IMG/VR virus record: IMGVR_UViG_3300027747_002221
Coordinates: 158,056 to 222,055 of that record
Length of the DNA stretch: 64,000 nt
Strand: one strand, 5' to 3'
Under the pieces are notes generated by a model that was given only the letters and a program-made list of their open reading frames with translations, was not told the origin of the DNA and searched no databases. Below, piece after piece: positions 12,345-51,001 of the stretch (positions within the stretch are counted from its first letter, which is position 1; every line of letters begins with the position of its first letter). The position numbers and the translations under genes are program-made.

Positions 12345-13241
12345 TTAGAATGTGATTGTACCTGAGCTATAGAATTTATATACAACATATCCGCCTGAAG
12401 ATGTTACGACTACATTAGATCCTGTGGTACTTGCAGCAGAAAATTCTGTAGGATGACGTAAAACAACTATACCAGAACCACCTTGTCCAAATTGCCCAGC
12501 ACCCGATTGTCCGCCACCTCCACCTCCACCTCCGCCGGTGTTAGTTAAACCATTATTAACTGCGCCGCCGCTTGAAGGTTGTCCTCGGCCACCGCCCCCC
12601 GCACCGCCATTTCCTCCGGGTGTGCCGTCGCCACTTCCCCCGCCGCCGCCGGCATAGGCAACATTTGCACCTGTAATTAAACTATATCTTCCGTCCCCAC
12701 CGTTACCCACCGTTACACCGTTGCTACCTACAGCACCTGCGCCCCCTCCCCCGGCGCCAAAGCCGGCGGCGGTTCCACCTGCAAATCCTTCTACCGGAGT
12801 ATAGCTACCTGCATTGCCCGGACCTGCCTGCCCAATAGTTTGATCGCCTGCTGATACATAACCGCCACCGCCGCCGCCGGATCCGCCTGATCTACCATGT
12901 CTGTTTGCAGGTGTGACAGAATATGTTCCTCCACCTCCACCTCCAGATGCGGTTATTGTGGAAAATACAGAATTTGTTCCGTTAGCTCCAAAAGTGGCTG
13001 CAGTAGTTCCCCCGGCACCTACGGTGACCGTTATTGGGGTTCCCGGGGTGAAATCACTATAACCTGTATTAGTTCTGTAGCCGCCGCCCCCACCTCCGCC
13101 ACCTGCTGAATTACCGCCTGAGCCGCCCCCAGCAACAACTAAATATTCTAATGTGAGGACAGAACGGAGAGGAACATTTGCCGAATTTAATCGGTTGTTA
13201 ACATTATTAAAATTTCTTGCCGTATGGCGTTTTGTTGACAT
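12345..13241 (-). CDS. Glycine-rich (polyglycine II-type) domain protein
   Basis: EYLVVAGGGSGG ... GGSGIVVLRHP ... FYSSGTITF; basic N-terminus. Confidence 0.8.
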   Translation of the reverse strand: MSTKRHTARNFNNVNNRLNSANVPLRSVLTLEYLVVAGGGSGGNSAGGGGGGGGYRTNTGYSDFTPGTPITVTVGAGGTTAATFGANGTNSVFSTITASGGGGGGTYSVTPANRHGRSGGSGGGGGGYVSAGDQTIGQAGPGNAGSYTPVEGFAGGTAAGFGAGGGGAGAVGSNGVTVGNGGDGRYSLITGANVAYAGGGGGSGDGTPGGNGGAGGGGRGQPSSGGAVNNGLTNTGGGGGGGGGQSGAGQFGQGGSGIVVLRHPTEFSAASTTGSNVVVTSSGGYVVYKFYSSGTITF

Positions 13242-13573
13242 TAGTATATCTCTGAACCAAACAGATTAAAGGTTACGTTACCTTGTAACGAGTAAACTTG
13301 CACAGTATCTGTTGCATCCAAAGTCATACCAAGTGTTAATGCAATTGCATCCTGTGCAGGTAATGCGGTATCATATGCAATATAGGCATTAGATGGTGTT
13401 GGGCTGGTACCTCTGGGAATTACTGCAATCCTAAATGTTACATTGGATTGAGATAAACTACATATATTTAATGTGGAAATAACTGCACTATTTCCTGCAG
13501 GTACGGTATATAATGTTGCATTTGCATTTGCTGCAGGAAAAGCCTGTCCTAGAATTTTATATTTAATTGTCAT
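13241..13573 (-). CDS. Conserved 110 aa virion protein (YKILGQ...LYTVP family)
   Basis: Clear paralogue of 37726..38055; TAATG coupling to the glycine-rich gene. Confidence 0.8.
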   Translation of the reverse strand: MTIKYKILGQAFPAANANATLYTVPAGNSAVISTLNICSLSQSNVTFRIAVIPRGTSPTPSNAYIAYDTALPAQDAIALTLGMTLDATDTVQVYSLQGNVTFNLFGSEIY

Positions 13574-13583
13574 TTTTTTTTCC

Positions 13584-13739
13584 TTACATTCCCGCCAATA
13601 GGAATGGACTTAGTGTTTCTATTACAAGAACGGTTTGTCCTGAAGAATTAATGGTTACAGAGCCTCCACTAATTGTTGCATGAACCGCAGTAATTGCGTT
13701 TGCCGATAGTCCATCTTGTTGAATTTGTGTTAGAGCCAT
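13584..13739 (-). CDS. 51 aa protein ending in SPFLLAGM (not in ORF track)
   Basis: MALTQIQQDGLSANAITAVHATISGGSVTINSSGQTVLVIETLSPFLLAGM; directly behind a late promoter with a GAGA SD-like sequence. Confidence 0.7.
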   Translation of the reverse strand: MALTQIQQDGLSANAITAVHATISGGSVTINSSGQTVLVIETLSPFLLAGM

Positions 13740-13770: not shown

Positions 13771-14607
13771 TTAATTCAAATCTTTGTTCTTGATGGAAAA
13801 GACCGAACCTTTGTCTATTTCTATTGAATTCCTCAAATTTCTAATTTTTGGTCTCCTTTTTTCGCTCTGTAGCATAGAGTTTGCCCCTATTACTAATAGA
13901 ATAGCTAACGGATCAAACACTATGATTATGAGTAAAATCATCCATGATACTGCTTTTTCCAATATACTTGTGTCCGTTGCCCCATACATAAATGCTGCAA
14001 TATACTTTATAGGACCTACTTCGGCCTCGACCTTTCGTACTTCAGCTGCGATTGGCGCACGCTCCTCGCTAATGGCAGCAACAATTTTCTGTTCGGCTTG
14101 GATCTCAGACTGAAGCCTTGCACGTTCTTTCTGCTGGGCACGTCTAATAGTAACTGCCTTCTCCGCACCCGTTTCTGAACTGCTTCTTGCCATGACTTGG
14201 TCCACTGCCTCATCCATTTGTTTAAGAGCTTTACGGTTCGCATCAATATTATCCTTTGCTGCTTTAATCTTTTCGTCATATATGGATATTTTTGCCAGCA
14301 CGTCACCTGACACTAAATTTTGATCGCTATGGGCTTTGGATAAGAATCCGAATATACCCATGGATGTTAGTAGGGATAAAACTACAACACTGGTAATAAA
14401 ATACGTTTTCATCAATGTGTTTATTTTGTTCCATTGTCTATATACGTAGGATGCTGTTACAAGTTTGCCCACTTCAAGAGCTGCGCCCATTATTAGAATA
14501 GGAGTTGGGCTAGCTGAAAAGATATAGGTCAATCCCATGATTGAAAAATATCCTGCTATACCTGAAATAGCTAAAGCTGTTCCCAATAATATAGCTGCAA
14601 AAATCAT
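13771..14607 (-). CDS. Membrane-anchored coiled-coil protein, conserved in T4-like phages
   Basis: Three N-terminal TM helices (LEVGKLVTAS), central coiled coil, EVGPIKYIA then FDPLAILL TM. Confidence 0.75.
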   Translation of the reverse strand: MIFAAILLGTALAISGIAGYFSIMGLTYIFSASPTPILIMGAALEVGKLVTASYVYRQWNKINTLMKTYFITSVVVLSLLTSMGIFGFLSKAHSDQNLVSGDVLAKISIYDEKIKAAKDNIDANRKALKQMDEAVDQVMARSSSETGAEKAVTIRRAQQKERARLQSEIQAEQKIVAAISEERAPIAAEVRKVEAEVGPIKYIAAFMYGATDTSILEKAVSWMILLIIIVFDPLAILLVIGANSMLQSEKRRPKIRNLRNSIEIDKGSVFSIKNKDLN

Positions 14608-16002: not shown

Positions 16003-16010
16003 ATATTTCC

Positions 16011-16691: not shown

Positions 16692-16695
16692 ACGG

Positions 16696-17640: not shown

Positions 17641-17649
17641 ATTATTTCC

Positions 17650-18792: not shown

Positions 18793-18804
18793 CTTATTTC
18801 CTAA

Positions 18805-19761: not shown

Positions 19762-19769
19762 CTTATTTC

Positions 19770-19830
19770 CTACCTAAATGTAATTGTTCCAGATTGCCAG
19801 AATCTGAAAATGATGTTTTGCGTTTGCATA
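19770..19830 (-). pseudogene. 3' end remnant of a deleted glycine-rich paralogue
   Basis: Removing one A gives YANANIIFRFWQSGTITFR*, versus YANANIIYRFWQSGTIIFN* in 20769..21719. Confidence 0.75.
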
Positions 19831-19833
19831 AAT

Positions 19834-20760: not shown

Positions 20761-20768
20761 ATTGTTTC

Positions 20769-21719: not shown

Positions 21720-21728
21720 ATTATGTTC

Positions 21729-36748: not shown

Positions 36749-37726
36749 TTAAGCTGTATATGTGCCGGAACTTTGGAAAGTTAATACTGTTTTACCTGGC
36801 GCTGAAGGTGGATTAGATGCTGCAACATTAGAACCTGTAAATGTACCAGAATATGACGGAGTCGGTATGGCTAGTATAGCAACACCCGACCCACCTGCTG
36901 CTCCGGAAATAGTTGGTGACCCGACAATTTGAGATCTTCCCCCTCCGCCTGTTCCTGTATATATTGTGCCGGCAACCGCAGCAAGGTCTTTATTCCCGCC
37001 GGTGCCCCCAGAAACACTCACATTACCCCCGGCCGCAGTAGGAGGCGTGAGGGCGGGGTTAAAAGCAGTGTCAGTTCCGCCACCGCCACCGCAGCTATAT
37101 ATGATGCCGGTGCTTTGAACAAAGCTCCAAGAAGATCCATTACCTCCAGCGCCTCCACGGCCGCCTGGGGCTACTTTGTCCCCACCAGCGGTGGCGGCAC
37201 CACCGCCACCACCACCACCAAGGTATGACAAGCCACCGGGATTGCCTTGTCCAATTATAGCGTTGCCCCGTGTACCGACATTGGCTGTACCTGTACATGT
37301 ACCACCACCCGACCCACCTATATTTCCATCAAAAGTGTCGTTATTAGTTGGTGGGGCGGCACCACCGCCACTACCACCACCGTATGCAACAGTGGCTGTA
37401 AAAGTTGAGTTGCTAAGTGTTGTATTAGAACCGTTGGCTGCTCTTGCTAACCCCACGCCGGCTGGGCCACCCGCACCAACGGTAATCGTATATACTGAGT
37501 AACCGGTCAGGTTGGCGGACCCCTGGACAAAGCCACCAGCACCACCTCCGCTGCCGCAATAGCCGCCTGGTATTGTGCCACCGCCACCGCCACCGCCACC
37601 CACTAGTAAAAAATCCACCGCATAGGATGGTCTGGGATCGATCCCAGATATAATTGCAGGTATATTAGCTTGGGCGTTTAATCTAGATACTGACCCTTTT
37701 CTAGTAGAACCCAACTTAAATCCCAT
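36749..37726 (-). CDS. Glycine-rich (polyglycine II-type) domain protein
   Basis: VDFLLVGGGGGGG ... GGSGVAILAIP ... FQSSGTYTA; basic N-terminus. Confidence 0.8.
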   Translation of the reverse strand: MGFKLGSTRKGSVSRLNAQANIPAIISGIDPRPSYAVDFLLVGGGGGGGGTIPGGYCGSGGGAGGFVQGSANLTGYSVYTITVGAGGPAGVGLARAANGSNTTLSNSTFTATVAYGGGSGGGAAPPTNNDTFDGNIGGSGGGTCTGTANVGTRGNAIIGQGNPGGLSYLGGGGGGGAATAGGDKVAPGGRGGAGGNGSSWSFVQSTGIIYSCGGGGGTDTAFNPALTPPTAAGGNVSVSGGTGGNKDLAAVAGTIYTGTGGGGRSQIVGSPTISGAAGGSGVAILAIPTPSYSGTFTGSNVAASNPPSAPGKTVLTFQSSGTYTA

Positions 37727-38055
37727 TAGGTAATCTCCGTACCAAATACTGCAAAACTTACGTTGCCTTGAAATGAATACCCTGTAATAACATCAGTATT
37801 ACCTAAAGACATACCTAGCGATAGTGCAATAGTATCTTGTGCAGGAATAGGTGAATCAAATACAATGTAATGTTTAGATGTGCCCGTTACACCTGCTGGT
37901 CTAATAGCTATTCTAAATGTAACATTTGATTGCGATTGATTACATACATTTAGAGTAGAGATAATTGCGCTCGCACCTGCGGGAACAGTATACAAATCCA
38001 CGTTTGCATTTGCCCCCGACATTGCCTGCCCTAAAACTTTATATGAATACGCCAT
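37726..38055 (-). CDS. Conserved 109 aa virion protein (YKVLGQ...LYTVP family)
   Basis: Paralogue of 13241..13573. Confidence 0.8.
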   Translation of the reverse strand: MAYSYKVLGQAMSGANANVDLYTVPAGASAIISTLNVCNQSQSNVTFRIAIRPAGVTGTSKHYIVFDSPIPAQDTIALSLGMSLGNTDVITGYSFQGNVSFAVFGTEIT

Positions 38056-38065
38056 TTAATTTTCC

Positions 38066-41000
38066 TTATAATAGAGATAACAGAAACGGATGTATCTGTT
38101 CCTGCACAATTGCGTTAATTTGTCCATTGGCCGAAATTGTTAAATTTTGTCCAACAGTTATATTACTATTTATTTGTCCGTTAGGCAGAACTTCAGTATT
38201 TTTTCCACCAAGATATGTTCCTGTGCCATTTAATGTTGGTAGCTCTCTTATTTCTACAGTTACACCTGTTCTTGGAGGAGTTGTAAATCTTAATAATCCG
38301 TTGTTTACGGAGTAATCTATTCCTGGAACTTGGGCTACGCCGTTTTCAAATACTAAAATACTCGAATCTGTAAAATTATTACTAATAAGTGTAGTATTTG
38401 CTACGCTATTACCGTAAAATAATCTACTGTTAAAATCTTTAGCTAAAACTTGAGCTACATCTAATATTCTAACATCTATATCCGCATTTGTTGCAGGGGC
38501 ACCACTTAAAGTAATTACATTGCCGCTTAGAGTATATGCATTAGATAATTGTGTAACACCATTAATAATAACAGTTACATAGTTATTATTTACAGGAGTA
38601 ACAGGAAGATTCAAAGTTATTACTTGAGCATTACCCCTAAATGTAGCAATGTATGGTTTAAATACTGCCCCAGGAGCCATTGCTGCATATACTCTGGCAT
38701 TTGAGAAGTATAGGTTTGCACCACCTTCAGCTAAATTAGCAGTTGTAAGTCCAGCTAATGATACTGTACCTGCTGAAGTATTGGATCTAATCTGACCATT
38801 TGCCGCAATTACGATAGTTGCATCTGTAGATAACGCAGATATTACTCTTGAATTAGTATAGTAAAGATTAGATCCTTCAGCAACATTTGATGTTGTTAAG
38901 TATGGTGTTAATACAGATACAACACGAGCATTAGTATAATATAAATTAGATGCAGATTCAATTACGTTTGCTGTATACAATCCTAACCAGCTATTGGCTT
39001 GAATATTATTAGCAGATATCAAATTGGCGCCGGTCATAGAACCGCCGGTGCCTGAACCAAAGAATGCGGTGTTTGCTACTACACTACCTATAGTGGCATT
39101 GCCAATAACAATATTACCTGTTAAAGCTGATAATACTCTTGTATTAGTATAGTAAAGGTTTGAGCCTTCTGTTAAATTAGCAGTTGTAAAATTACTAATA
39201 CTTAAAACAGTATTTGCCACATTGGATGTTGATGCAAATCCCGATGTTGCGGATGCTGTTGCATTAATTTGTCCGTTGGCTTGAATCTGTATACCTGATC
39301 CTGCCAATGTTGGCAATAATGCAATTACATTAGCAAATACTCTAGCGTTGGTAAAATATAAATTACCTGTCGTTTCTATTACATTGGCTGTATAAAGCCC
39401 CAACCAACTATTAGCTTGTATATTTGTGGCAGATATCAAATTGGCGCCGGTCATAGAACCGCCGGTGCCTGAACCAAAGAATGCCGTATTTGCTACAATA
39501 TTATTAGCAGATATCAAATTGGCGCCTGTTACAGAACCACCGACCCCTGAACCAAAGAATGCCGTATTTGCTACTACACTACCTATAGTGGCATTGCCTA
39601 TGGTAATATTACCTGTTAATGCTGATAGAACACGAGTATTAGTATAATAAAGATTAGAACCTTCTGCTAAATTAGCAGTAGTAAAATTACTTAAAGTTAA
39701 AACAGTATTTGCCACATTGGATGTTGATGCAAATCCCGATGTTGCTGATGCTGTTGCATTAATTTGACCATTAGCCTGAATCTGTATACCAGAGCCAGCT
39801 AAGCTAGGTAATAATGCAATTACATTTGAGTATACTCTAGCATTGGTAAAATATAGGTTTGTATTTTCAATTACGTTAGATGTATACAATCCTAACCAAC
39901 TATTAGCTTGTATATTTGTGGCAGATATTAAATTTGCACCTGTTACAGAACCGCCGGTGCCAGAACCAAAGGATGCTGTATTTGCTATTACATTACCTGT
40001 GGTAACATTAACTGCAGTAATATTATTAGTTTGAATATTATTTGCGGATATTAAGTTTGCCCCAGCTATTATTCCGCCTGTGCCTGTTCCAAATAGTAAT
40101 GTGCCTGTTGCTATTACATTGCCCGCTGTAACATTTCCTGAGGTAACATAGCTATTGGATACAGAAGTGCCTGTAACTAAATTACCTACTACAAGATTAC
40201 CTGTTAATGCAGATAATACTCTGGCGTTAGTGTAGTAAAGATTCGAACCCTCAGAAACATTGGATGTTGTTAAGAATGGTGCAAGTGTTGCTAGAGATAA
40301 TGATTGGGCGTTTGCGTTAATTTGTCCGTTGGCTTGAATCTGTATACCTGATCCTGCCAATGTTGGCAATAATGCGATTACATTGGAATAAACTCTAGCA
40401 TTGGTAAAATAAAGGTTTATATTTTCGATTACATTAGATGTATACAATCCTAACCAACTATTAGCTTGTATATTATTTGCGGATATTAAGTTTGCACCTG
40501 TTACAGAACCGCCGGTGCCTGAACCAAAGAATGCAATGCCAGTTGCTATTACATTACCTGCGGTTACATTACCTGTGGTAACATAACTATTAGATACAGA
40601 AGTGCCTGTAACTAGATTACCAATAGTAACATTACCTGTTAACGCTGATATAACACGCGCATTTGTATAATAAAGGTTCGATCCTTCAGATACATTTGAT
40701 GTTGTTAAGAATGGTGCAAGAGTTGCCAGGGATATTGATTGAGCGCTTGCATTAATTTGACCATTGGCTTGAATCTGTATACCTGATCCAGCTAATGAGG
40801 GTAATAGTGCGATTACATTTGAATAAACTCTTGCATTTGTAAAATATAAATTACCTGCTGTTTCTATTACGTTTGCTGTATATAAACCTAACCAAGTAAT
40901 ACCTTGTATATTATTTGCGGATAACAAATTAGCGCCAACTATAGAACCGCCGGCACCTGAACCAAAGACTGCCCCAGTTGCTATCACATTACCTATAGTG

Positions 41001-44000
41001 GCGTTGCCTATAGCAACGTTGCCCGCCAATGCAGCTATAACATTTGAATAAACTCTTGCATTTGTAAAATATAAATTACCTGCTGTTTCTATTACGTTTG
41101 CTGTATATAAACCTAACCAAGTAATACCTTGTATATTATTTGCGGATATTAAGTTTGCCCCTGCTATTACTCCGCCGGCACCTGAACCAAATAATAGTGT
41201 GCCTGTTGCTATTACATTGCCTGCGGTTACATTACCTGCAGTAACATAGCTATTGGATACAGAAGTGCCTGTAACCAGATTACCAATAGTAACATTACCT
41301 GTTAACGCCGACAATACTCTAGCGTTTGTATAGTAAAGATTGGATCCCTCTGATACATTTGAGGTACTTGTTATCGAAACACCAGAAGCAGTGGCATTGA
41401 TTTGACCATTAGCCTGAATCTGTATACCTGATCCAGCTAATGAGGGTAATAGTGCAATTACATTGGAATAAACTCTAGCGTTGGTAAAATAAAGGTTTGT
41501 ATTTTCAATTACATTTGCTGAATACAGGCCTAACCAATTAATACTCTGTATATTATTTGCGGATATTAAGTTTGCACCTGTTACAGAACCGCCGGTGCCT
41601 GCACCAAAGACTGCAATACCGGTTGCTATTACATTGCCTGCTGTAACATTTCCTGAGGTAACATAACTATTAGATACAGATGTGCCTGTAACTAAATTAC
41701 CTACTACAAGATTGCCTGATAGTGCTGATAAAACACGAGCATTAGTATAATAAAGATTAGACCCCTCTGATACATTAGATGTGGTTAAGAATGGTGCAAG
41801 TGTTGCTAGAGATAATGATTGGGCATTTGCATTAATTTGACCATTGGCTTGAATCTGTATACCTGATCCAGCTAATGAGGGTAATAGTGCGATTACATTT
41901 GAATATACTCTAGCGTTTGTGAAGTATTGATTAATCCCTTCAATTACATTAGATGTATACAACCCTAACCAATTAATACCTTGTATATTATTAGCAGATA
42001 TCAAATTAGCGCCAACTATAGAACCGCCGCCACCTGAACCAAATAATACTGTACCGGTTGCTATTATATTACCAGCTGTAACATTTCCGGCGGTAACATA
42101 ACTATTGGATACAGAAGTGCCTGTAACCAGATTGCCTATGGTAACATTGCCGGTCAATGCTGACAATACCCTAGCGTTTGTATAGTAAAGATTAGAACCC
42201 TCAGATACATTTGAGGTACTTGTTATCGAAGCACCAGAAGCAGTGGCATTGATTTGACCATTGGCTTGAATCTGTATGCCTGATCCTGCCAATGTTGGCA
42301 ATAATGCGATTACATTTGAATATACTCTAGCGTTTGTGAAGTATTGATTAATCCCTTCAATTACGTTAGACGTGTATAAACCTATCCAATTAATACCTTG
42401 TATATTATTTGCGGATAATAAATTGGCGCCTGTTATGGAATTACCTGTAGCAGACCCGAATACTATATTAGTAGCTGATATTAAGTTTAGACCCGTTAAA
42501 GATCCACCTGATGCAGATCCTATTATTAACGTATTTGCTATTACAACATTGCCTGCAGTAACATTACCTGCGGTAACATAACTATTAGATACTGAAGTAC
42601 CGGTAACAAGATTACCAATGGCAACATTGCCTGTTAAAGCTGATAATACTCTAGCATTGGTATAATATAGATTGGAATTGGATTCTGCAACATTGGCAGT
42701 TGTAAGGAATTGAGATACCGCTCCAATAGATATAGTTTGTGTATTAGCATTAATCTGACCATTGGCGGCAATGGTAATATTTTGACCAGCTAAGCTAGGT
42801 AAGAATGCAATAACATTACTATTAACACGCACATTAGTATAGTATAAATTAATACCTTCAGCTAAATTAGCAGTTGTAAAGTTACTTAAAGTACCTACGG
42901 TACCTGTTACATTGCCAAAGAATGTTGTTGCTGCAATGTTAGCTAATCTAAATGAGGCGTGTGCTGTATCAATAAAGATATTAGCATCAGGTTCTGGAGA
43001 ATAATTATCAAATACTTTGAATGTACCGTTATCGGATGCGTCTCTGAAGAAACCACCATGTCGATATACACCATCATTATAATTAAATGCAAAACCAATA
43101 TCAGGATTCGAAACAGTAGAATTCGAATTCAAGTAAATCATATTATCCGAAACGGATATATTATTTGCACCGTATGTAGTTACACCACCATATACTGTTA
43201 AGTTGTTTGTAATACTAACATTCTGGAATGTTACGTCAGCAGTTGCTGCTACATTTTGTCCAATTGATATTGCACCTGTAACAGAATTATAACTTACACC
43301 AGTTCCGCTGCTTAAAGTAGATCTTACTCTAGAATTGGTATAGTAAAGATTATTTAATTCTGTTACATTGGCAGTTGTTAGGTATGGTTGTACGAAAGAA
43401 TTTACTCTTGTATTTGTATAATATAATGCGCTACTTGATTCTATTACATTGGCTGTATAAAGTCCTATCCAAGAATTACCTTGGATGAATGTTGCAGATA
43501 ATAAATTGGCACCAGTAAAGGAACCACCAGTGCCTGCACCAAATGTAGTACTACCCGATACACTAATATTGCCTACAGTTGCATTACCGATAGCAATATT
43601 ACCTGCCAACAACGCTGTAACGTTAGAGTAAACGCGATTATTAGTGTAATATAGATTGGAACCTTCGGCAACATTTGAAGTAGTTAAATACGGTGCTAAT
43701 ACTGATATAACACGAGCATTTGTATAATATAAATTTTGATTGCCTTCAGCTACATTATTTGTAGTTATATTGGCAATAGTTGCATTAAGATTTGCAAATT
43801 CAAGACTTACGTTTGCACTAATTCTACCATTGGCTTCAATTATAATACTTTGCCCGGCAGTAAATGCGGATCTTACTCTTGAATTAGTATAATATAAATT
43901 GGCATTTGATTCTGCTAAATTTGCAGTTGTAAAGTTACTTAAAGATAATACAGAATTAGCTACATTTGACCTATCTGAAGTATTGGCATGGTCTGCTTGA

Positions 44001-45748
44001 TATGCAAACAATGCGGTGTTTGCAGCTGTTCCGGAATCTATAGTACCAGATACAAATTTTGTACCATTCCAAATTAATATACCGTTGGTTGTAATGCCTG
44101 TTATATCTACATCTGCAAATACATTAACACTTTGCTGCTCTAAATTAGCAGTAACTCTCGCATTAGTAAAGTAAAGATTTGAACTTGATTCTAATACGTT
44201 GGCAGTAGTTAGATATGATGTAAGAGCAGATATTACTCTTGCATTAGTAAAGTATAGATTAGTACCTTCTATTAAATTGGATGTAGTAAAATTAGATAAT
44301 GAACTTACTGTACCTGTTATATTACCTACGAATGATCTGGTAACTACAAGATTACCTGTAGTAATATTTGAGGCCGTAAGAGTAACTAAGCTTAAACCTG
44401 TCTGATTATTTCCTGATAATTTTTGTCCACCTACATATAATGACTCTGCACTTAGGTAAAAGTCTTTCCATTGTTTATCTGCAGAACCAAAATTAAATCT
44501 GGTGTCTTCGGAAGGAATAATATTACCGGCAATAATTATATTGCCAGATGAGGAAATTAATTTACCTGTTTGAATATTGTCTGAAGATACTAAATTGGCG
44601 CCTGTCAAAGAACCACCCGCACCAGCACCAAATGTAGTACTACCCGATACACTAATATTGCCCACACTTGCATTACCTAGTAAGATATTACCTGCAAGTG
44701 TAGTTATAACATTAGAATAAACGCGAGCATTAGTATAATATAGATTGGAACCTTCAGCAACATTTGAAGTAGTTAGATAAGGCAAAACTACGGATATTAC
44801 TCGGGCATTTGTATAATATAATGCGCTACTTGATTCTATTACATTGGCTGTATAAAGTCCCAACCAAGAATTGCCCCGAATAAAGGCACCAGATAATAAA
44901 TTAGCTCCTGTTATAGAACCACCAAAACCAGAACCAAATAAAGCACTATCTGCTATTACATTGCCAGCGGTAACATTGCCTGAGGTAACATAACTATTAG
45001 ATATAGAAGTGCCTGTAACTAGATTACCTATTGTAACATTACCTGTTAAAGCCGTCAATACTCTTGCATTAGTATAGTATAAATTACTACCTTCAGCAAC
45101 ATTTGAAGTAGTTAGATAAGGTAATACTACGGATATTACGCGAGCATTAGTATAATATAAATTATTTAATTCTGTTACGTTAGCTGTCGTTAAATCTGTT
45201 ACATTAGCCTTTGCTGCTAAATTACCCTGAATAGCAGCGTAAACTCTCGCATTAGTATAATATAAATTAGAACTTGATTCTAATATATTAGCAGTAGTCA
45301 AATAAGGAGTAACTGCAGATATAACGCGAGCGTTGGTGTAGTATAAATTAGAACTTGATTCTAATATATTAGCAGTAGTCAAATAAGGAGTTACTGCAGA
45401 TATAACGCGAGCGTTGGTGTAGTATAAATTGATACCTTCAACCAAATTAGCAGTTGTAAAATTGTTTAAGGTTAAAACAGTATTAGCAATGTTTGCGGTT
45501 AAGGCAACATTTGCTATTAAGGCAACATTTGCTATTCCGGAAGTATTTGCAAAGTATGGTACACTGGATCCTGATGCAGGATCTACCCAAATTCTATTAC
45601 CATTAATATCGGATGAAAGTACGTATCCAGAAACGGCAGGCAGACCTAAGTCTGGTTCTGTTTCTGATAATCCAATAAATTGGTATCGGTCAGCGCTTAC
45701 ATTTGCGCTAGTAACTTTTGCAATTCTGCCCGAGATTAGTTTAGTCAT
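38066..45748 (-). CDS. Giant repetitive fibre-like protein (2560 aa)
   Basis: About 34 NLY(Y/F)TNARV repeats by manual count; C-terminus IHPFLLSLL. Confidence 0.8.
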   Translation of the reverse strand: MTKLISGRIAKVTSANVSADRYQFIGLSETEPDLGLPAVSGYVLSSDINGNRIWVDPASGSSVPYFANTSGIANVALIANVALTANIANTVLTLNNFTTANLVEGINLYYTNARVISAVTPYLTTANILESSSNLYYTNARVISAVTPYLTTANILESSSNLYYTNARVYAAIQGNLAAKANVTDLTTANVTELNNLYYTNARVISVVLPYLTTSNVAEGSNLYYTNARVLTALTGNVTIGNLVTGTSISNSYVTSGNVTAGNVIADSALFGSGFGGSITGANLLSGAFIRGNSWLGLYTANVIESSSALYYTNARVISVVLPYLTTSNVAEGSNLYYTNARVYSNVITTLAGNILLGNASVGNISVSGSTTFGAGAGGSLTGANLVSSDNIQTGKLISSSGNIIIAGNIIPSEDTRFNFGSADKQWKDFYLSAESLYVGGQKLSGNNQTGLSLVTLTASNITTGNLVVTRSFVGNITGTVSSLSNFTTSNLIEGTNLYFTNARVISALTSYLTTANVLESSSNLYFTNARVTANLEQQSVNVFADVDITGITTNGILIWNGTKFVSGTIDSGTAANTALFAYQADHANTSDRSNVANSVLSLSNFTTANLAESNANLYYTNSRVRSAFTAGQSIIIEANGRISANVSLEFANLNATIANITTNNVAEGNQNLYYTNARVISVLAPYLTTSNVAEGSNLYYTNNRVYSNVTALLAGNIAIGNATVGNISVSGSTTFGAGTGGSFTGANLLSATFIQGNSWIGLYTANVIESSSALYYTNTRVNSFVQPYLTTANVTELNNLYYTNSRVRSTLSSGTGVSYNSVTGAISIGQNVAATADVTFQNVSITNNLTVYGGVTTYGANNISVSDNMIYLNSNSTVSNPDIGFAFNYNDGVYRHGGFFRDASDNGTFKVFDNYSPEPDANIFIDTAHASFRLANIAATTFFGNVTGTVGTLSNFTTANLAEGINLYYTNVRVNSNVIAFLPSLAGQNITIAANGQINANTQTISIGAVSQFLTTANVAESNSNLYYTNARVLSALTGNVAIGNLVTGTSVSNSYVTAGNVTAGNVVIANTLIIGSASGGSLTGLNLISATNIVFGSATGNSITGANLLSANNIQGINWIGLYTSNVIEGINQYFTNARVYSNVIALLPTLAGSGIQIQANGQINATASGASITSTSNVSEGSNLYYTNARVLSALTGNVTIGNLVTGTSVSNSYVTAGNVTAGNIIATGTVLFGSGGGGSIVGANLISANNIQGINWLGLYTSNVIEGINQYFTNARVYSNVIALLPSLAGSGIQIQANGQINANAQSLSLATLAPFLTTSNVSEGSNLYYTNARVLSALSGNLVVGNLVTGTSVSNSYVTSGNVTAGNVIATGIAVFGAGTGGSVTGANLISANNIQSINWLGLYSANVIENTNLYFTNARVYSNVIALLPSLAGSGIQIQANGQINATASGVSITSTSNVSEGSNLYYTNARVLSALTGNVTIGNLVTGTSVSNSYVTAGNVTAGNVIATGTLLFGSGAGGVIAGANLISANNIQGITWLGLYTANVIETAGNLYFTNARVYSNVIAALAGNVAIGNATIGNVIATGAVFGSGAGGSIVGANLLSANNIQGITWLGLYTANVIETAGNLYFTNARVYSNVIALLPSLAGSGIQIQANGQINASAQSISLATLAPFLTTSNVSEGSNLYYTNARVISALTGNVTIGNLVTGTSVSNSYVTTGNVTAGNVIATGIAFFGSGTGGSVTGANLISANNIQANSWLGLYTSNVIENINLYFTNARVYSNVIALLPTLAGSGIQIQANGQINANAQSLSLATLAPFLTTSNVSEGSNLYYTNARVLSALTGNLVVGNLVTGTSVSNSYVTSGNVTAGNVIATGTLLFGTGTGGIIAGANLISANNIQTNNITAVNVTTGNVIANTASFGSGTGGSVTGANLISATNIQANSWLGLYTSNVIENTNLYFTNARVYSNVIALLPSLAGSGIQIQANGQINATASATSGFASTSNVANTVLTLSNFTTANLAEGSNLYYTNTRVLSALTGNITIGNATIGSVVANTAFFGSGVGGSVTGANLISANNIVANTAFFGSGTGGSMTGANLISATNIQANSWLGLYTANVIETTGNLYFTNARVFANVIALLPTLAGSGIQIQANGQINATASATSGFASTSNVANTVLSISNFTTANLTEGSNLYYTNTRVLSALTGNIVIGNATIGSVVANTAFFGSGTGGSMTGANLISANNIQANSWLGLYTANVIESASNLYYTNARVVSVLTPYLTTSNVAEGSNLYYTNSRVISALSTDATIVIAANGQIRSNTSAGTVSLAGLTTANLAEGGANLYFSNARVYAAMAPGAVFKPYIATFRGNAQVITLNLPVTPVNNNYVTVIINGVTQLSNAYTLSGNVITLSGAPATNADIDVRILDVAQVLAKDFNSRLFYGNSVANTTLISNNFTDSSILVFENGVAQVPGIDYSVNNGLLRFTTPPRTGVTVEIRELPTLNGTGTYLGGKNTEVLPNGQINSNITVGQNLTISANGQINAIVQEQIHPFLLSLL
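45262..45423. repeat. 81 bp in-frame tandem duplication
   Basis: Two copies, one mismatch, each encoding ISAVTPYLTTANILESSSNLYYTNARV. Confidence 0.85.
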
Positions 45749-46091
45749 TTGCTGATTCTAGTACGCTCATTAATAATTGAACTGAGTTGTTTGCACTTGC
45801 TGATGAATATACTTTTTGTCCTGTTTCGAGAACTAATTTTGCGCCAGCACTAATGACCGCCATAGCATCACCCGAAGGAATTTTAAAATTCTTTGCAAGA
45901 GCGGTTAGAGTATTACCCGCGGCAGAGTTGGCGCCGTGATAGAAATTAACCGTAACAACGTTGGCTGAGATATTAGTTGCTTGAACCGATAAGAATATGG
46001 CAGTTTTTCTTAATGGTGCCTGATATAAAAGTCTATCGGCTGTCGTTAAATCTGCTGTTACTGTTTTGAATGTGTTTAATGCTGTTGCCAT
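45741..46091 (-). CDS. Conserved 116 aa virion protein
   Basis: LNTFKTVT...LYQAP..KTAI.LSVQATN ... KLVLETG; size and pattern resemble the YKVLGQ family. Confidence 0.7.
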   Translation of the reverse strand: MATALNTFKTVTADLTTADRLLYQAPLRKTAIFLSVQATNISANVVTVNFYHGANSAAGNTLTALAKNFKIPSGDAMAVISAGAKLVLETGQKVYSSASANNSVQLLMSVLESAND

Positions 46092-46093
46092 TT

Positions 46094-49000
46094 TTATCCT
46101 TCGATTGCTAATATATATGGTGTCATAACTGAGAACAATGCCTTGTTGAATGTTCTACCAGAAATGGTACCGTCAACTCTATTAAATACTAGTTCTGTAC
46201 CAATTCTAAAGTCTCCTTGTTGATCGGTACTTGTGAAATAAACTCTTCCACCTTTTTCCTCAGTTACTTCATTGTCCTGTATTGGGAAACCGCCGTTATA
46301 TGGTAACGCTGTTTGAATACTTGTACCTGAACCGATATACTCAAATGTATATCCAAGAGCAGAGATGTAACTTGGTTGATGTAAAGTTAATGTGGAATTT
46401 GCCAATATTGTAGTATCCGTCACGCCCTCTAATAATGTAACATACGATACATTACCAACCATCGGAGTACTGTTTGCCACTGTATAGAATGCTACAGAAC
46501 CATTACTAATATTTGCCCATTCTTTACTAATGTAACCTAATACTTCAGCAGTAATATAATCTTTATTTGCAAGAACAATCTTTGCTGCATTATAGGAATT
46601 AGCTGCAACTGATACATTACCATTGATAGGTCTCTTTGGAGGTGCTACAGAAGGACCTTGGGAAACAATATTTGTAATAAGGTTTATGTTATTTATTATT
46701 AAGTTTGCCTCAGTATACGTTGCTGCAGATGCTGCTGTAGTATTTTGTCTGGCTAATATTTGATAAGGTGGATCAAATAAAACATCGTTAATATATGCAA
46801 TAGTCTCAGCCTTAATAAATTCTTTATTAGCAAGAATAATCTTTGTTGCATTAACTACATTAGCATTTGTGCTTGCATTTGCACCTATAGGTAATTTGGC
46901 TTTCGCAACGCTTGGACCATTAGTAATAATACTAGTAATTAAACTAATATCTGTTAAAATTGTTGCGGTTTCTGTAGATGTTGCTGCGGTTGCTGCAGTT
47001 GTATTTTGAGTAACATATGTTTGTCTAGTTGTTACTGGTAAATTTTGTATAATATTACCTATAATACTACCAATATAATCATACGCTTGACCTGTCTTAA
47101 CAATTTGATTGTTAATCTGAGTAGTGTTTGCATTATAGTTATAATAGTATGTTCCTGATTGAACCGATTGCTTATTGCCACCATGCTTCAAATCAAATAT
47201 AATACTATCTAAGAGATAACCAACATCGCGAGAACAAGTAGTCTGTGCATTTGCGGCATCCACAAAATTATTTGCGTTAGCAAAGAATCCGGGGTATGTT
47301 TGATTTACATAAGCAATAACTTCTGCCTGGATAAATGACTTATTATTAGTAATCAAATTAGCAGCGCGCGATACATTAACATTTGTATTTGATGGATATT
47401 GATTTGAAACAATTCTATCTGTTACACCGACTGTTCCATTAGCAATAATATCTTTAATTAATTCAAAATTTGTATCTACAACAGTTGTTTCTGCTTCTGT
47501 ACCTGCCAAACCTGTTAAACTTTGTGTTACGTTTGCTTGTTTAACTGAAGTAATTAAATTCTTCAAAACAACATTGGATGCTAATTGCTTAGCATAAGTA
47601 ATTGCTGCTAATGTTTCAGTATTTTGATTTTTAATTGCGGATTCGGTTTGTGACCAATATTGTAAACCTGCAAAATTAGCTTGGGTATTACCAGAATAAG
47701 CTAAGTCAAATGCCAATGCATCTACAATTAATCCAGTATCTCTTTCACATTTTTCTTGATTATATGCTGCAACCTTTTTATTTGTTACAATCTTACTTAT
47801 AATAGAACCAATGTAATTATATGCTGCACCTGTTTGTACAACTTGATTATTAATTTGCGTTGTATCTACACTATAATTATAGTAGTATGTTCCAGACATA
47901 ATTGCTTGACGATTGCCGCCATGCAATAAATCAAATGTAACGCTATCAATCATATAGCCTACATCGCGAGAACAAGTAATTTCAGAATTTGCTACGTCAA
48001 CAAAATTGTTGGCATTGCTAAAGAATCCAGGATAAGTTTGTCTTATATATGCAACAGTTTCTGCAGCAATAAAACTCTTATTGGATAATAATAGATTTGC
48101 TGTTCTATTTAAAGATACATTGGATGTAACATCTAATCCGTTAGGTATAATTCTATCTGTTACACCAACTGTTCCGCCAGTAATAATATTAGCAATTAAA
48201 TCAAATTCTGCATTTATATTTGCAGAAGAATTACCGCCAGGACCTCTTACTTGGAAAACGTTTGCTTGATAAGATTGTGTCGGAGTCACATTAGCAGTAA
48301 CATTTGCAGCTAAACTTTTTACAAATGAAATCGCTGCAACAGTTTGTGACTGTTCATTTGCAATAGCAGATGTAGATTGTCCCCAATATTGTAGACCAGC
48401 AAATGCAGATTGCGTGTTACTACCATATGCAAGATCTATTGCCAAGGAATCTAAAATTAACCCAGTATCTCTTGCACATTTATCTCTATTATAATTTGCG
48501 AATAGAACAGCATCACCATAATTTGGTCTTGCAGTTAAATTAGCAAAAATATATTGTGTTCCTGTATCTGTTTCAGTAGTACCTGTAAACACACCATATG
48601 TTAATGGAGTACTAACACCTCTTGCAACTAAACCTAATCTACCAAATGATGCGTTAGAATTTGTTATAGAACAGAAGCCACCATTCTCAGCAAGAATAGC
48701 AATATCACAACAAATTGTAAATACTGAAACTAATTGAGTGTAACCTCTGTTAAGCATATGTATACCAATACCACCCTCGTTGGTTTGTGTATACGAGTCA
48801 ACAACAACTGACCTTAATCCGCTTACATAGTCGCCGTTTACTCTTAAACCAGTACCTGTTGTAGTAATGGATGAAGAATTTTGAATATATGGGCTGGTTG
48901 TAATAAATCCTGCAGAACCATCTGGATTGTATGAAAATACTGCTGAAGGAGACTGATGATCTCTAAACGTAAATCCTGTTACATAACAAGCATTATTAAC

Positions 49001-51001
49001 ATAGAACATATCCTGAGTAACATTCGCAGGGCGAATTGTCGTTGTTCTTAAATTATCTCCAACCAAACCAACACGCTTTTTAATTGTTACTGGTTGTTGG
49101 TATAATGTATATTCGCCAGATTTAACAAATACGGTTGTCCAAGAATTTGCTCTGTTTAAAGCAGTGTGAATATTAGCCAATGCATTTGCTACAGAATTAC
49201 CAGAATTATTATCGTTACCACTCTTTGAAACATATAATACGTTACTTACAGGTGCTTCTATTTGTGATCTTAATAATGCTAAACTTTGATTTAATGGATT
49301 AAGCGTAATTGCTTGATCACCATTAACAAAAATATTACCTGTAGTATTTACTTCACCTGTTATATCTACTGGTTTGTTTATTACAAATTTATTGCCGGTA
49401 CTTGCATAAGTAATATTAGCATTTGCGCCTGCAATAGATATACCTGCACCATCAGCTGCGGCAGCATTTATTGCACCGTTTGCTAATAATAGATTCTTAT
49501 CTTCAATGTTTACTGTTGATGCATTTAATGTAACAGTATTTCCCTGAACTACTAAATCACCTGCAACAGTTAAGTTATTTACAGAAACATCGCTAGTAGC
49601 AAGATTGGCTAATACTCTTGCATTTGTATAATATAAATTAGTGCCTTCAACTACATTGGCAGTTGTCAAGTATGGAGTTACTGCGGATATAACACGAGCA
49701 TTTGTATAATATAATTTTGTGCCCTCTACTAAATTAGCAGTGGTGAAATTACTAATCGATAATACTGTATTTGCTATGTTTGCTGTATATGCAACATTGG
49801 CAATACTTGCTGTCTCGGCTGTTACAACTGTCGGAATAAACGCACTTCCATTCCATACTAAAGCATAACCATTCTGCACTCCAGTAATATCAACGTCTGT
49901 AAATACGTTAACACTCATTTGTGCTACATTAGCAAATACTCTAGCATTCGTAAAGTATAAATTACTACCCTCTGCTAAATTCGCAGTGGTAAAATTACTA
50001 ATCGATAATACAGAATTAGCTACATTTGAATTATCCGCAGTATTGGCATGGTCTGCTTGGAATGCAACTAACGCAGTATTAGATGTGGCAGCACCACCTA
50101 CTGTGCCTGCAACAAATGCAGTTCCATTCCAGGACAATATACCGTTCGTTTGAATACCCGTAATATCAACGTCTGATAATACGTTGATACTCATTTGAGA
50201 TACGTTAGCTAATACTCTAGCGTTTGTAAAGTATAAATTGGATGCCGTTTCTATTACATTAGCAGTATATAATCCATTCCAAATATTAGCAGTAATTTTT
50301 GTTACTGTTATATTGGCACCTTGCGCAGAACTGAATACTTCTACACCATTGATAACTAAAGAATTAGAAACTATTGAGTTTGCTGTTATGTTGCCTGTTG
50401 CTAAAATAGAAGTTAAGTTAGCATTTGAATCAGAAAGCAAAACATCTTTCCAGGCAGAACCATAAACTTGTACGGTGGCAGTATTAGAATTATATACTAA
50501 ATCTCCTGTAGAAGGAGTAAAAGTATCTCTTACTGTTTTAGTAACAGGATTTAATCTTAATGCCGAAGATTGGACAACAACTGCGCCACCGTTGATGCCG
50601 TTGGCAGCAAGGTTAATATTTGTGGCAGAAGATAATGTAGGTACACCTGTACCTGTGCTGATGAATGAATTTGCTGTAACAGTATTTGCCGTTAAGCCAT
50701 CCGTTAGGTTTAGATTACCCTGAACAGTAGAATTGGTTAGAGCAGTTAATACTCTTGCATTTGTGAAATAAAGATTAATGCCTTCAATTACGTTTGACGT
50801 GTATAAGTTATTCCAAATATTAGCAGTAATTTTTGTTACTGTTATATTAGCGCCCTGGCCAGAACTAAATATTTCTACGCCATTAACAACTAACGCATTT
50901 GTACTTATTGTTCCGTTGGCATTGACATTTCCGCCGACGTTGATAAAAGCATCAACGAACGCGTTGCCATAAATCCTTGTCCCACTTAGTAATTTTGCCA
51001 T
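46094..51001 (-). CDS. Large fibre / virion structural protein with a beta-helix-like domain (1635 aa)
   Basis: YVSKSGNDNNSG, VGDNLRTTTIRP, SPYIQN, DSYTQ.NEGG; duplicated KC.RDTGLI.D / TCSRDVG modules; about 5 TNARV repeats. Confidence 0.8.
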   Translation of the reverse strand: MAKLLSGTRIYGNAFVDAFINVGGNVNANGTISTNALVVNGVEIFSSGQGANITVTKITANIWNNLYTSNVIEGINLYFTNARVLTALTNSTVQGNLNLTDGLTANTVTANSFISTGTGVPTLSSATNINLAANGINGGAVVVQSSALRLNPVTKTVRDTFTPSTGDLVYNSNTATVQVYGSAWKDVLLSDSNANLTSILATGNITANSIVSNSLVINGVEVFSSAQGANITVTKITANIWNGLYTANVIETASNLYFTNARVLANVSQMSINVLSDVDITGIQTNGILSWNGTAFVAGTVGGAATSNTALVAFQADHANTADNSNVANSVLSISNFTTANLAEGSNLYFTNARVFANVAQMSVNVFTDVDITGVQNGYALVWNGSAFIPTVVTAETASIANVAYTANIANTVLSISNFTTANLVEGTKLYYTNARVISAVTPYLTTANVVEGTNLYYTNARVLANLATSDVSVNNLTVAGDLVVQGNTVTLNASTVNIEDKNLLLANGAINAAAADGAGISIAGANANITYASTGNKFVINKPVDITGEVNTTGNIFVNGDQAITLNPLNQSLALLRSQIEAPVSNVLYVSKSGNDNNSGNSVANALANIHTALNRANSWTTVFVKSGEYTLYQQPVTIKKRVGLVGDNLRTTTIRPANVTQDMFYVNNACYVTGFTFRDHQSPSAVFSYNPDGSAGFITTSPYIQNSSSITTTGTGLRVNGDYVSGLRSVVVDSYTQTNEGGIGIHMLNRGYTQLVSVFTICCDIAILAENGGFCSITNSNASFGRLGLVARGVSTPLTYGVFTGTTETDTGTQYIFANLTARPNYGDAVLFANYNRDKCARDTGLILDSLAIDLAYGSNTQSAFAGLQYWGQSTSAIANEQSQTVAAISFVKSLAANVTANVTPTQSYQANVFQVRGPGGNSSANINAEFDLIANIITGGTVGVTDRIIPNGLDVTSNVSLNRTANLLLSNKSFIAAETVAYIRQTYPGFFSNANNFVDVANSEITCSRDVGYMIDSVTFDLLHGGNRQAIMSGTYYYNYSVDTTQINNQVVQTGAAYNYIGSIISKIVTNKKVAAYNQEKCERDTGLIVDALAFDLAYSGNTQANFAGLQYWSQTESAIKNQNTETLAAITYAKQLASNVVLKNLITSVKQANVTQSLTGLAGTEAETTVVDTNFELIKDIIANGTVGVTDRIVSNQYPSNTNVNVSRAANLITNNKSFIQAEVIAYVNQTYPGFFANANNFVDAANAQTTCSRDVGYLLDSIIFDLKHGGNKQSVQSGTYYYNYNANTTQINNQIVKTGQAYDYIGSIIGNIIQNLPVTTRQTYVTQNTTAATAATSTETATILTDISLITSIITNGPSVAKAKLPIGANASTNANVVNATKIILANKEFIKAETIAYINDVLFDPPYQILARQNTTAASAATYTEANLIINNINLITNIVSQGPSVAPPKRPINGNVSVAANSYNAAKIVLANKDYITAEVLGYISKEWANISNGSVAFYTVANSTPMVGNVSYVTLLEGVTDTTILANSTLTLHQPSYISALGYTFEYIGSGTSIQTALPYNGGFPIQDNEVTEEKGGRVYFTSTDQQGDFRIGTELVFNRVDGTISGRTFNKALFSVMTPYILAIEG

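What the first reader, a model, noticed from the sequence alone, without database searches (positions are those of the whole stretch)
12345..13739. A three-gene docking module present twice: PFLL tail, YKxLGQ adaptor, glycine-rich head
Seen: the 51 aa gene ending ETLSPFLLAGM, then the 110 aa YKILGQ gene, then a TAATG-coupled glycine-rich gene (13739-12345). The order repeats at 45748-36749: the 2560 aa fibre ending EQIHPFLLSLL, the 109 aa YKVLGQ gene, and a TAATG-coupled glycine-rich gene. The carriers are 51 versus 2560 aa but share the C-terminal (H/S)PFLL. Both heads have basic N-termini, unlike the ITGG array members. Inference: PFLL is a portable peptide that recruits the adaptor, which mounts an adhesin, analogous to gp37-gp38 tip attachment.
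Basis: partly seen in the sequence, partly recalled or inferred. Interest (0 to 1): 0.62.

Follow-up and report, generated by a model that had tools for sequence, protein, structure and literature searches.

The report
Phage tail-fibre docking joint module
A small jelly-roll protein encoded between fibre genes appears to clip a glycine-rich receptor-binding tip, or the next fibre segment, onto a short conserved peptide at the very end of the preceding protein; the arrangement is real, widespread in phages and apparently undescribed, but the binding itself is still inferred.

Summary
The 222-kb phage genome holds four such junctions, three of them in the window. Each has a carrier protein with a conserved C-terminal peptide, then a ~110-aa gene, then a tightly coupled cargo gene.

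There are two cognate dialects. Type A has a tail ending F-L-L-x-G-x, a YKxLGQ adaptor and a cargo that starts with a basic peptide. Type B has a tail TP(Y/F)ILA, an LNTFKT adaptor and a cargo that starts LSGR…DRY…EPNLG.

In 118 related viral loci, 29 of 30 distinct type A tails and 24 of 24 distinct type B tails carry the matching motif. Background ORF ends match at 6 and 0 of 2590, and no cross-pairing was seen. Carriers range from 51 to more than 3000 aa and are otherwise unrelated.

The adaptor is an eight-stranded jelly roll with no Pfam family and about 4900 clusters. In other phages it is often fused to the N-terminus of the same glycine-rich domain. The head is a polyglycine-II domain like Pam3 gp24 and a Bxb1 tail-tip chain. 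A type B homologue is annotated as a virion protein in Synechococcus phage S-SCSM1.

My reading is that the adaptor is the split-off anchor domain of the distal protein and docks on the carrier's tail. Physical binding is untested.

The parts
13584..13739 (-). 51-aa mini-carrier: one fibre-like repeat plus the type A C-terminal tail. The last 8 residues, SPFLLAGM, are encoded at 13587-13610.
   Evidence: conserved in a diverged relative with synonymous changes; weak similarity to the fibre repeats and to the C-terminus of the 2560-aa fibre.
13241..13573 (-). Type A adaptor, 110 aa, an eight-stranded jelly roll.
   Evidence: phrog_1276 at E 1.3e-8 and no Pfam hit. AF2 model with pLDDT 91.8. Fold searches.
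12345..13241 (-). Glycine-rich head 1, 298 aa, joined to the adaptor by a TAATG overlap. Residues 1-27 (13161-13241) form a basic peptide predicted to be disordered; the rest is a polyglycine-II domain plus a beta-sandwich.
   Evidence: PF21722 at 75.7 bits. AF2 pLDDT 87.3 overall, with residues 1-10 and 15-20 below 50 and 21-30 averaging 59. Z 13.1 to Bxb1 tail tip chain 9d93_Qa and Z 12.9 to Pam3 fibre 7ypx_A.
46094..51001 (-). 1635-aa fibre protein, the carrier of a type B tail. TPYILAIEG is encoded at 46097-46123.
45741..46091 (-). Type B adaptor, 116 aa. It lies 2 nt after the 1635-aa gene and overlaps the start of the 2560-aa gene by 8 nt.
   Evidence: phrog_1276 at E 1.9e-9. Profile-profile match to type A at 95.9% probability, E 6e-9. 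85 phage records with homologues.
38066..45748 (-). 2560-aa repetitive fibre. It is the cargo of the type B joint (N-terminus LISGR...DRY.F..LS..EP.LGLP) and the carrier of a type A tail (HPFLLSLL, encoded at 38069-38092).
37726..38055 (-). Type A adaptor, 109 aa, 62% identical to the first.
36749..37726 (-). Glycine-rich head 2, 325 aa, TAATG-coupled, with a basic N-terminal peptide (about 37637-37726).
   Evidence: PF21722 at 67.1 bits..

Best explanation
These are modular joints of a multi-protein tail fibre.

The ~110-aa jelly-roll protein is the N-terminal anchor domain of the distal component. In many phages it is part of that component's polypeptide. Here it is split off as its own gene.

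It attaches the distal component to the preceding protein by capturing that protein's extreme C-terminal hydrophobic peptide. Type A tails read F-L-L-x-G-x at the C-terminus and type B tails read TP(Y/F)ILA followed by 2-4 residues.

When the adaptor is split from its cargo, the cargo holds on through its own conserved N-terminal segment. In type A this is a basic peptide of about 25 residues that is disordered on its own. In type B it is the LSGR...DRY...EPNLG segment.

In this phage the result would be a five-protein chain: the 1635-aa fibre, a type B adaptor, the 2560-aa fibre, a type A adaptor and a 325-aa polyglycine-II tip. There would also be a second, minimal unit of a 51-aa stub, a type A adaptor and a 298-aa tip.

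Shown:
- gene order and translational coupling
- the motifs and their fixed position at the C-terminus
- the two cognate dialects
- the folds of adaptor and head
- natural adaptor-head fusions
- virion annotation of a type B homologue

Inferred:
- that tail and adaptor touch
- how they touch; strand addition to, or a hydrophobic groove on, the jelly roll is my guess
- the stoichiometry
- that the tip binds a host receptor
For: (1) In the own genome there are 4 tails and 4 adaptors, always adjacent, among 1002 ORFs.

(2) Type A survey of 52 viral loci: 29 of 30 distinct upstream proteins end in the type A motif. Complete carriers range from 51 to 1100 aa and are otherwise unrelated in sequence (a 3193-aa one occurs in L061). 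The median gap from carrier stop to adaptor start is 8 nt. The cargo usually starts within the adaptor's stop codon.

(3) Type B survey of 66 loci: 24 of 24 distinct upstream tails are type B and none is type A. Nearly all cargos start with an (L)SGR-type segment, most continuing DRY...EPNLG.

(4) Among 2590 distinct background ORF ends in the same loci, 6 match type A and 0 match type B.

(5) The two adaptor types are homologous: hhalign 95.9%, E 6e-9. Both hit phrog_1276.

(6) Rosetta-stone fusions. Among the best 150 of 4913 relatives, 13 single-domain fusions carry the adaptor at the N-terminus. Five have adaptor plus Gly_rich_2 in one chain and lack the basic peptide; others have adaptor plus a LamG-like domain or plus Ig/RCC1-like repeats. 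A tandem adaptor pair precedes a collagen-like region.

(7) Fused adaptor-heads still follow a carrier ending FLLMGA. The tail's partner is therefore the adaptor domain, not the basic peptide.

(8) Residues 1-27 of the head are predicted disordered, as expected for a peptide that folds on a partner.

(9) In S-SCSM1 the homologue gp027 lies between genes annotated 'long tail fiber protein' and 'long tail fiber protein distal subunit' and is labelled 'virion protein'. That paper determined virion proteins by mass spectrometry of CsCl-purified particles. P-SSM2 has the same order, genes 293-294-295.

(10) The head fold matches Pam3 fibre gp24 and a Bxb1 tail-tip chain (literature).
Against: - There is no direct evidence of contact between tail and adaptor.
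- The motif patterns were written after seeing the survey data. The loci were found by peptide-pattern scans and share ancestry, so the counts are not independent events.
- One type A tail, shared by two loci (L030 and L057), has an upstream gene without the tail.
- Stoichiometry is unclear. About 30 of the best 150 relatives are tandem double jelly rolls, and in L059 and L061 one carrier is followed by three or four adaptor-bearing heads.
- The 51-aa carrier has no evident way of being fixed to the virion.
- Virion evidence is for a type B homologue in another phage and rests on the record's annotation. I did not see the peptide table.
Confidence: 0.6

Rival explanations
1. The ~110-aa protein is a tail-fibre assembly chaperone. 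It acts on the C-terminus of the upstream fibre, as Tfa proteins or T4 gp38 do, and is not a structural link. The conserved tail would be the chaperone's recognition site.
For: Chaperone genes typically follow fibre genes directly and act on fibre C-termini (general knowledge). The tail-adaptor adjacency fits this equally well.
Against: The homologue is labelled a virion protein in S-SCSM1. The domain is fused to the N-terminus of distal receptor-binding-type domains in many phages. It has no match to chaperone families in Pfam or PHROGs. Carriers of 51-82 aa leave little to be folded.
Confidence: 0.12
2. The jelly roll is a terminal knob or cap of the upstream protein only. The downstream gene product is mounted elsewhere, and the tight gene coupling merely reflects co-expression.
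For: The jelly-roll fold resembles oligomeric knobs and cement proteins: KHP40 cement Z 10.1, TNF/C1q about 7. phiPsal1 and the P-SSM2 gene 302 locus have different downstream genes.
Against: Natural fusions join the adaptor to the downstream domain, not to the upstream protein: 13 single-domain fusions have it at the N-terminus. The 3 with it at the C-terminus have N-terminal extensions that do not look like fibres. The cargo N-termini are conserved in a dialect-specific way.
Confidence: 0.1
3. The C-terminal motif is an intrinsic trimerisation, folding or processing signal of fibre-like proteins. Its co-occurrence with the adaptor gene is inherited synteny without direct recognition.
For: Type B carriers share a longer homologous C-terminal region, so common descent explains part of that pattern. 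A subtilisin-like protease gene lies in the cluster.
Against: Type A carriers share nothing but the last 7-10 residues. The motif sits at a fixed distance from the C-terminus. The two dialects never cross-pair, even within one genome. In this genome the other large proteins of the fibre cluster, such as the 1467-aa and 1542-aa proteins, lack the motif.
Confidence: 0.08

Closest known systems
T4 long tail fibre joints (gp34-gp35-gp36-gp37)
   Same: The fibre is built from serial gene products encoded in order. A small separate protein is encoded between the proximal and distal fibre genes. The homologues in S-SCSM1 and P-SSM2 sit between genes annotated as fibre proteins.
   Different: There is no sequence relation: the PHROG and Pfam scans give only phrog_1276 and tail-fibre PHROGs. 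The adaptor is a 110-aa jelly roll, against roughly 370 aa for gp35 (from memory). The same device is reused at two levels of one fibre and carries an explicit C-terminal peptide code.
T2/S16-type gp38 adhesin capping gp37
   Same: A separately encoded glycine-rich polyglycine-II tip sits at the distal end of a long fibre (literature).
   Different: According to the Pam3 paper's description, gp38 caps the gp37 tip as a single folded protein. Here a separate jelly-roll gene and a disordered basic N-terminal peptide intervene. There is no Pfam GP38 match.
Cyanophage Pam3 fibre gp24 and the Bxb1 tail-tip chain 9d93_Qa (a paper places polyglycine-II bundles in the gp33 'brush' domains of that entry)
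   Same: Head fold: Z 12.9 over 168 residues at 31% identity, and Z 13.1 over 171 residues at 36% identity. The next hit is Z 5.2. Pam3 gp24 also combines a jelly-roll (TNF-like) domain with the glycine-rich domain.
   Different: Pam3 gp24 is fixed to the baseplate wedge by an N-terminal helical domain and disulfides. The adaptor model did not retrieve gp24's TNF-like domain in particular.
ExsF / F-Anchor peptide complex of Bacillus endospore appendages
   Same: A small jelly-roll protein captures a terminal peptide of a fibre protein. It appeared among the Foldseek matches (9h3d, 7r5i). Some cargos here are collagen-like.
   Different: The fold match is weak (TM about 0.42) and the system is unrelated. 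It is a mechanistic analogy only.

Membership tests
Pfam PF21722 Gly_rich_2 (the two heads) | HMM score above the gathering threshold | tested here: met
   75.7 and 67.1 bits against a cut-off of 24.3. Also phrog_2295 at E 3e-46 and 2e-27.
Polyglycine-II receptor-binding domains (Pam3 gp24, Bxb1 tail-tip chain, S16 gp38) | Glycine-rich polyglycine-II lattice fold covering most of the domain | tested here: met
   Z 13.1 (9d93_Qa) and Z 12.9 (7ypx_A), far above the next hit at 5.2, which is the ALK glycine-rich domain.
Polyglycine-II receptor-binding domains (Pam3 gp24, Bxb1 tail-tip chain, S16 gp38) | Binds a host surface receptor | not testable with these tools
   Inferred from fold and position only.
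T2/S16-type gp38 adhesin | Sequence family (Pfam GP38) and its own folded N-terminal attachment domain | tested here: not met
   No Pfam hit besides Gly_rich_2 at E <= 1. Residues 1-27 are predicted disordered.
PHROG 1276 (adaptors; function unknown) | HMM match | tested here: met
   E 1.3e-8, 1.2e-8 and 1.9e-9 for the three window copies.
T4 gp35-type hinge | Sequence similarity to gp35 | tested here: not met
   PHROG and Pfam scans returned no hinge or connector family.
T4 gp35-type hinge | Small virion protein encoded between the proximal and distal fibre genes | tested here: met
   Window order 1635 aa, 116 aa, 2560 aa. S-SCSM1 gp026-027-028, with gp027 labelled 'virion protein'.
Tail fibre assembly chaperones (Tfa/Caudo_TAP, T4 gp38/gp57A type) | Sequence family membership | tested here: not met
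   No such family in the Pfam, PHROG or NCBIfam scans.

The most novel reading that the evidence does not exclude
A general peptide-to-jelly-roll docking code with at least two orthogonal dialects lets very different phages bolt any distal module onto any carrier. These phages include T4-like cyanophages, an actinobacterial siphovirus and an Acidithiobacillus myovirus. A trimeric carrier with three identical tails could display up to three different heads at once, or alternative heads across the virion population. This would explain loci where one tail is followed by three or four adaptor-bearing heads.
Probability: 0.3. Interest if true: 0.75.

Novelty: new variant of a known kind. Interest (0 to 1): 0.6.

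Why it matters
Host range in tailed phages is set at the fibre tip. For marine cyanophages the fibre architecture is essentially unassigned: these genes are annotated 'hypothetical' or 'virion protein'.

If the model holds, it does three things:
- It assigns a role to a very large uncharacterised protein family. The family has about 4900 clusters at 50% identity and no Pfam entry.
- It gives a parts list for the long fibre of T4-like cyanophages.
- It defines a short, testable recognition code. The last 6-8 residues would explain how tips are exchanged between phages, and the code could be used to mount chosen receptor-binding domains in laboratory phage-host pairs.

Tried and rejected
**Complex prediction.** I submitted three copies of the adaptor plus three copies of the 51-aa carrier. 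The result was 'no answer' (score 0.01, mark 0.32, controls not run). The tool states that this is no evidence for or against binding, and I do not use it.

**Searches that found nothing useful**
- DNA-level search of the trio against phage records gave only a 78-nt match.
- A profile search of the adaptor against PDB sequences found nothing.
- A profile search of the head against PDB sequences gave only marginal Pam3 hits at E 0.03. The fold search was needed.
- A full-text search for the motif strings gave 0 papers.
- A search for PF21722 / Gly_rich_2 gave 0 papers.
- The Bxb1 structure paper is not held, so I could not read how its glycine-rich chain is attached.
- NCBIfam gave no family for the adaptor, the head or the 51-aa protein.

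**Ideas considered and rejected**
- That the 51-aa ORF is spurious. It is conserved with synonymous changes, and mini-carriers of 51-98 aa recur in 14 of the 27 complete distinct carriers.
- That the adaptor is fused to the upstream protein in some phages. The three proteins with the domain at the C-terminus have N-terminal extensions that do not look like fibres.

Full report
**What is in the window.** All genes of the window lie on the minus strand. The six ORFs named in the finding exist as described.
- First trio: a 51-aa gene ending SPFLLAGM (13584-13739), a 110-aa gene (13241-13573), and a 298-aa glycine-rich gene (12345-13241) whose ATG overlaps the adaptor's stop codon as TAATG.
- Second trio: a 2560-aa repetitive fibre ending HPFLLSLL (38066-45748), a 109-aa gene (37726-38055), and a 325-aa glycine-rich gene (36749-37726), joined in the same way.

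The two small proteins are 62% identical. Both heads start with a basic segment. The six paralogous glycine-rich genes at 16696-22646 start with an M.I.I(T/S)GG element and a poly-Pro run instead.

**Genome context.** The window is the last 64 kb of a 222,055-bp viral record rated complete. Ribonucleotide reductase, primase and structural PHROGs, together with the relatives found later, place it among T4-like cyanophage-type myoviruses.

I scanned all 1002 ORFs of at least 40 aa for a P-aromatic-aliphatic-aliphatic motif in the last ten residues. That gave four plausible genes and two short plus-strand ORFs. All four genes are followed directly by a homologue of the small protein.

- the 1635-aa fibre (46094-51001, ending TPYILAIEG), then a 116-aa gene (45741-46091), then the 2560-aa fibre;
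- outside the window, a 968-aa protein ending TPYILALQ, then a 120-aa gene, then a 556-aa collagen-like protein.

The genes therefore spell a chain: 1635 aa, 116 aa, 2560 aa, 109 aa, 325 aa.

**Is the association general? Type A.** An alignment of adaptors retrieved 52 viral loci. I took the ORF ending just upstream and the ORF starting just downstream of each adaptor.
- Of 30 distinct upstream C-termini, 29 end in a motif with F at -6, L at -5, L or T at -4 and G at -2. Examples are FLLMGA, FLLAGM, FLLSLL and FLTSGM.
- Complete carriers range from 51 to 1100 aa (a 3193-aa one appears in L061), and 14 of 27 are under 100 aa. Apart from the last 7-10 residues their C-terminal 51 residues are unrelated.
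- The downstream gene usually starts inside the adaptor's stop codon and begins with a basic, Ser/Thr-rich peptide.
- That gene is most often a ~300-aa Gly_rich_2 protein. It can also be a protein of more than 1300 aa or a collagen-like protein.

**Type B.** The 116-aa and 120-aa proteins retrieved 66 loci.
- All 24 distinct upstream tails read ...S(L/I)F...TP(Y/F/L)(I/L)(L/I)A... near the end. None is type A.
- Nearly all downstream proteins begin with an (L)SGR-type segment, and most continue with DRY.F..L..AEP.LG.
- Among 2590 other distinct ORF ends in the same loci, 6 match the type A pattern and none matches type B.
- The two adaptor types are homologous: hhalign 95.9%, E 6e-9. Both hit phrog_1276.

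The patterns were written after looking at the data, and the loci are related to each other. The figures therefore measure strength of association, not independent events.

**The adaptor.**
- It has no Pfam or NCBIfam family.
- AF2 gives a confident eight-stranded jelly roll with pLDDT 91.8.
- Its nearest solved folds are small oligomeric jelly rolls: a nucleoplasmin-like core and the trimeric cement protein of phage KHP40 (both Z 10.1), the HFTV1 turret, and Ena pilins. Foldseek also lists ExsF, which binds a fibre's terminal peptide. None of these assigns a function.
- Among predicted viral structures the same fold appears in many ~110-aa uncharacterised phage proteins, in the S-SCSM1 'virion protein', and inside 'tail fiber-like' proteins of S-CAM1 and P-SSM2.
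- An exhaustive profile search found 4913 clusters at E <= 1e-3 and 1989 at E <= 1e-10.

**Fusions.** Most relatives are stand-alone proteins of about 109 aa. About 30 of the best 150 are tandem doubles. Thirteen are longer proteins with a single copy of the domain at the N-terminus.

Reading the longer ones:
- Five are adaptor plus Gly_rich_2 in a single chain. A short linker stands where the split heads have their basic peptide.
- Others are adaptor plus a LamG-like domain, or adaptor plus Ig and RCC1-like repeats.
- A further protein has two adaptors followed by a collagen-like region.

This is the strongest evidence that adaptor and cargo are one functional unit.

In the contigs that encode the fused forms, the gene upstream still ends in FLLMGA. 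The tail's partner is therefore the adaptor domain, and the basic peptide is needed only when the unit is split. In line with that, residues 1-27 of head 1 are predicted disordered while the rest of the model is confident.

**The head.** The model has pLDDT 87.3. It matches a chain of the Bxb1 tail tip (Z 13.1, 171 residues, 36% identity) and the Pam3 fibre gp24 (Z 12.9, 168 residues, 31% identity). The next hit is the ALK glycine-rich domain at Z 5.2.

The Pam3 paper describes gp24 as a helical anchor, a TNF-like domain and a polyglycine-II domain, and compares it with the S16 gp38 adhesin that caps gp37 (PMC9942802). Another paper places polyglycine-II bundles in the Bxb1 'brush' domains (PMC13243192).

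**Is the adaptor structural?** In Synechococcus phage S-SCSM1 the type B homologue gp027 lies between genes annotated 'long tail fiber protein' and 'long tail fiber protein distal subunit', and its product is named 'virion protein'. The flanking proteins carry the type B tail and an SGR-type N-terminus.

The S-SCSM1 paper determined virion proteins by mass spectrometry of CsCl-purified particles (PMC9602691). I did not see the peptide table, so this evidence rests on the record's label. P-SSM2 has the same order in genes 293-295. Type A-like relatives occur in Pontimonas phage phiPsal1 ('putative virion structural protein'), in P-SSM2 gene 302 and in Acidithiobacillus phage AcaML1. Each follows a gene with a short hydrophobic C-terminus.

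**Interpretation.** The best reading, at about 0.6, is a modular fibre joint. The jelly roll is the anchor domain of the distal protein. It recognises the preceding protein's C-terminal peptide in a dialect-specific way. When encoded separately, it is held to its cargo by the cargo's N-terminal segment. In T4 terms, type B behaves like the gp34-gp35-gp36 knee and type A like the mounting of a gp38-type tip.

The rivals are:
- a chaperone for the upstream fibre (0.12);
- a cap of the carrier that is unrelated to the downstream gene (0.10);
- a folding or processing signal with merely inherited synteny (0.08).

All three are weakened by the fusions, the virion label, the mini-carriers and the absence of cross-pairing. 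None is excluded without a binding experiment.

**Open points.**
- The stoichiometry is unknown. Tandem doubles exist, and some loci have several heads per tail.
- It is unclear what fixes the 51-aa stub to the particle.
- One type A tail, shared by two loci, lacks the motif.
- It is unclear whether the tail is retained or processed; a subtilisin-like protease gene lies in the cluster.

**Novelty.** Multi-protein fibres, small joint proteins and polyglycine-II tips are all known. New, as far as the searched literature and family libraries show, are three things: this jelly-roll family as the joint, the terminal-peptide code with two dialects, and its breadth.

The single complex prediction allowed gave no answer and is reported only under things tried.

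Noticed in passing
window 15247-22646 (-): Eight consecutive genes share an N-terminal element, M.I.(I/L)(T/S)GG....GG followed by a proline run. Two are LamG-like (251 and 226 aa) and six are Gly_rich_2 (305-380 aa). None has an adaptor gene or an FLL tail nearby. This looks like a second, different anchoring module for the same kind of head.
   Followed up: partly
window 34817-36445 (-) and 36447-36740 (-): A subtilisin-like S8 protease gene (phrog_9158/3677) and a 97-aa fibre-like gene follow head 2. P-SSM2 has the same order, with gene 297 containing PF00082. The protease might process fibre proteins.
   Followed up: no
L059:899-6474 and L061:1-7133: One carrier ending FLLMGA is followed by three or four adaptor-bearing glycine-rich heads in a row. 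Two are fused and one is split; L061 adds a further head without an adaptor. This suggests mixed or alternative tips on one fibre.
   Followed up: partly
proteins P0121, P0122 and about 30 others; P0163, P0181: Many relatives are tandem double jelly rolls of 212-245 aa. Two ~130-aa relatives carry N-termini that look like signal peptides, so they may be cellular rather than viral.
   Followed up: no
window 13771-14607 (-): A 278-aa protein with predicted membrane segments and a coiled-coil region lies directly upstream of the 51-aa carrier. It has weak sub-threshold hits to DUF4407 and Tetraspanin. Its relation to the module is unknown.
   Followed up: no
G000:C1:13178-18128 (L006:2179-7129, -): The fourth junction of the genome lies outside the window. 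It is a 968-aa carrier ending TPYILALQ, a 120-aa type B adaptor, and a 556-aa collagen-like cargo (NCBIfam collagen-like adhesin models at E 6e-20, below cut-off).
   Followed up: partly
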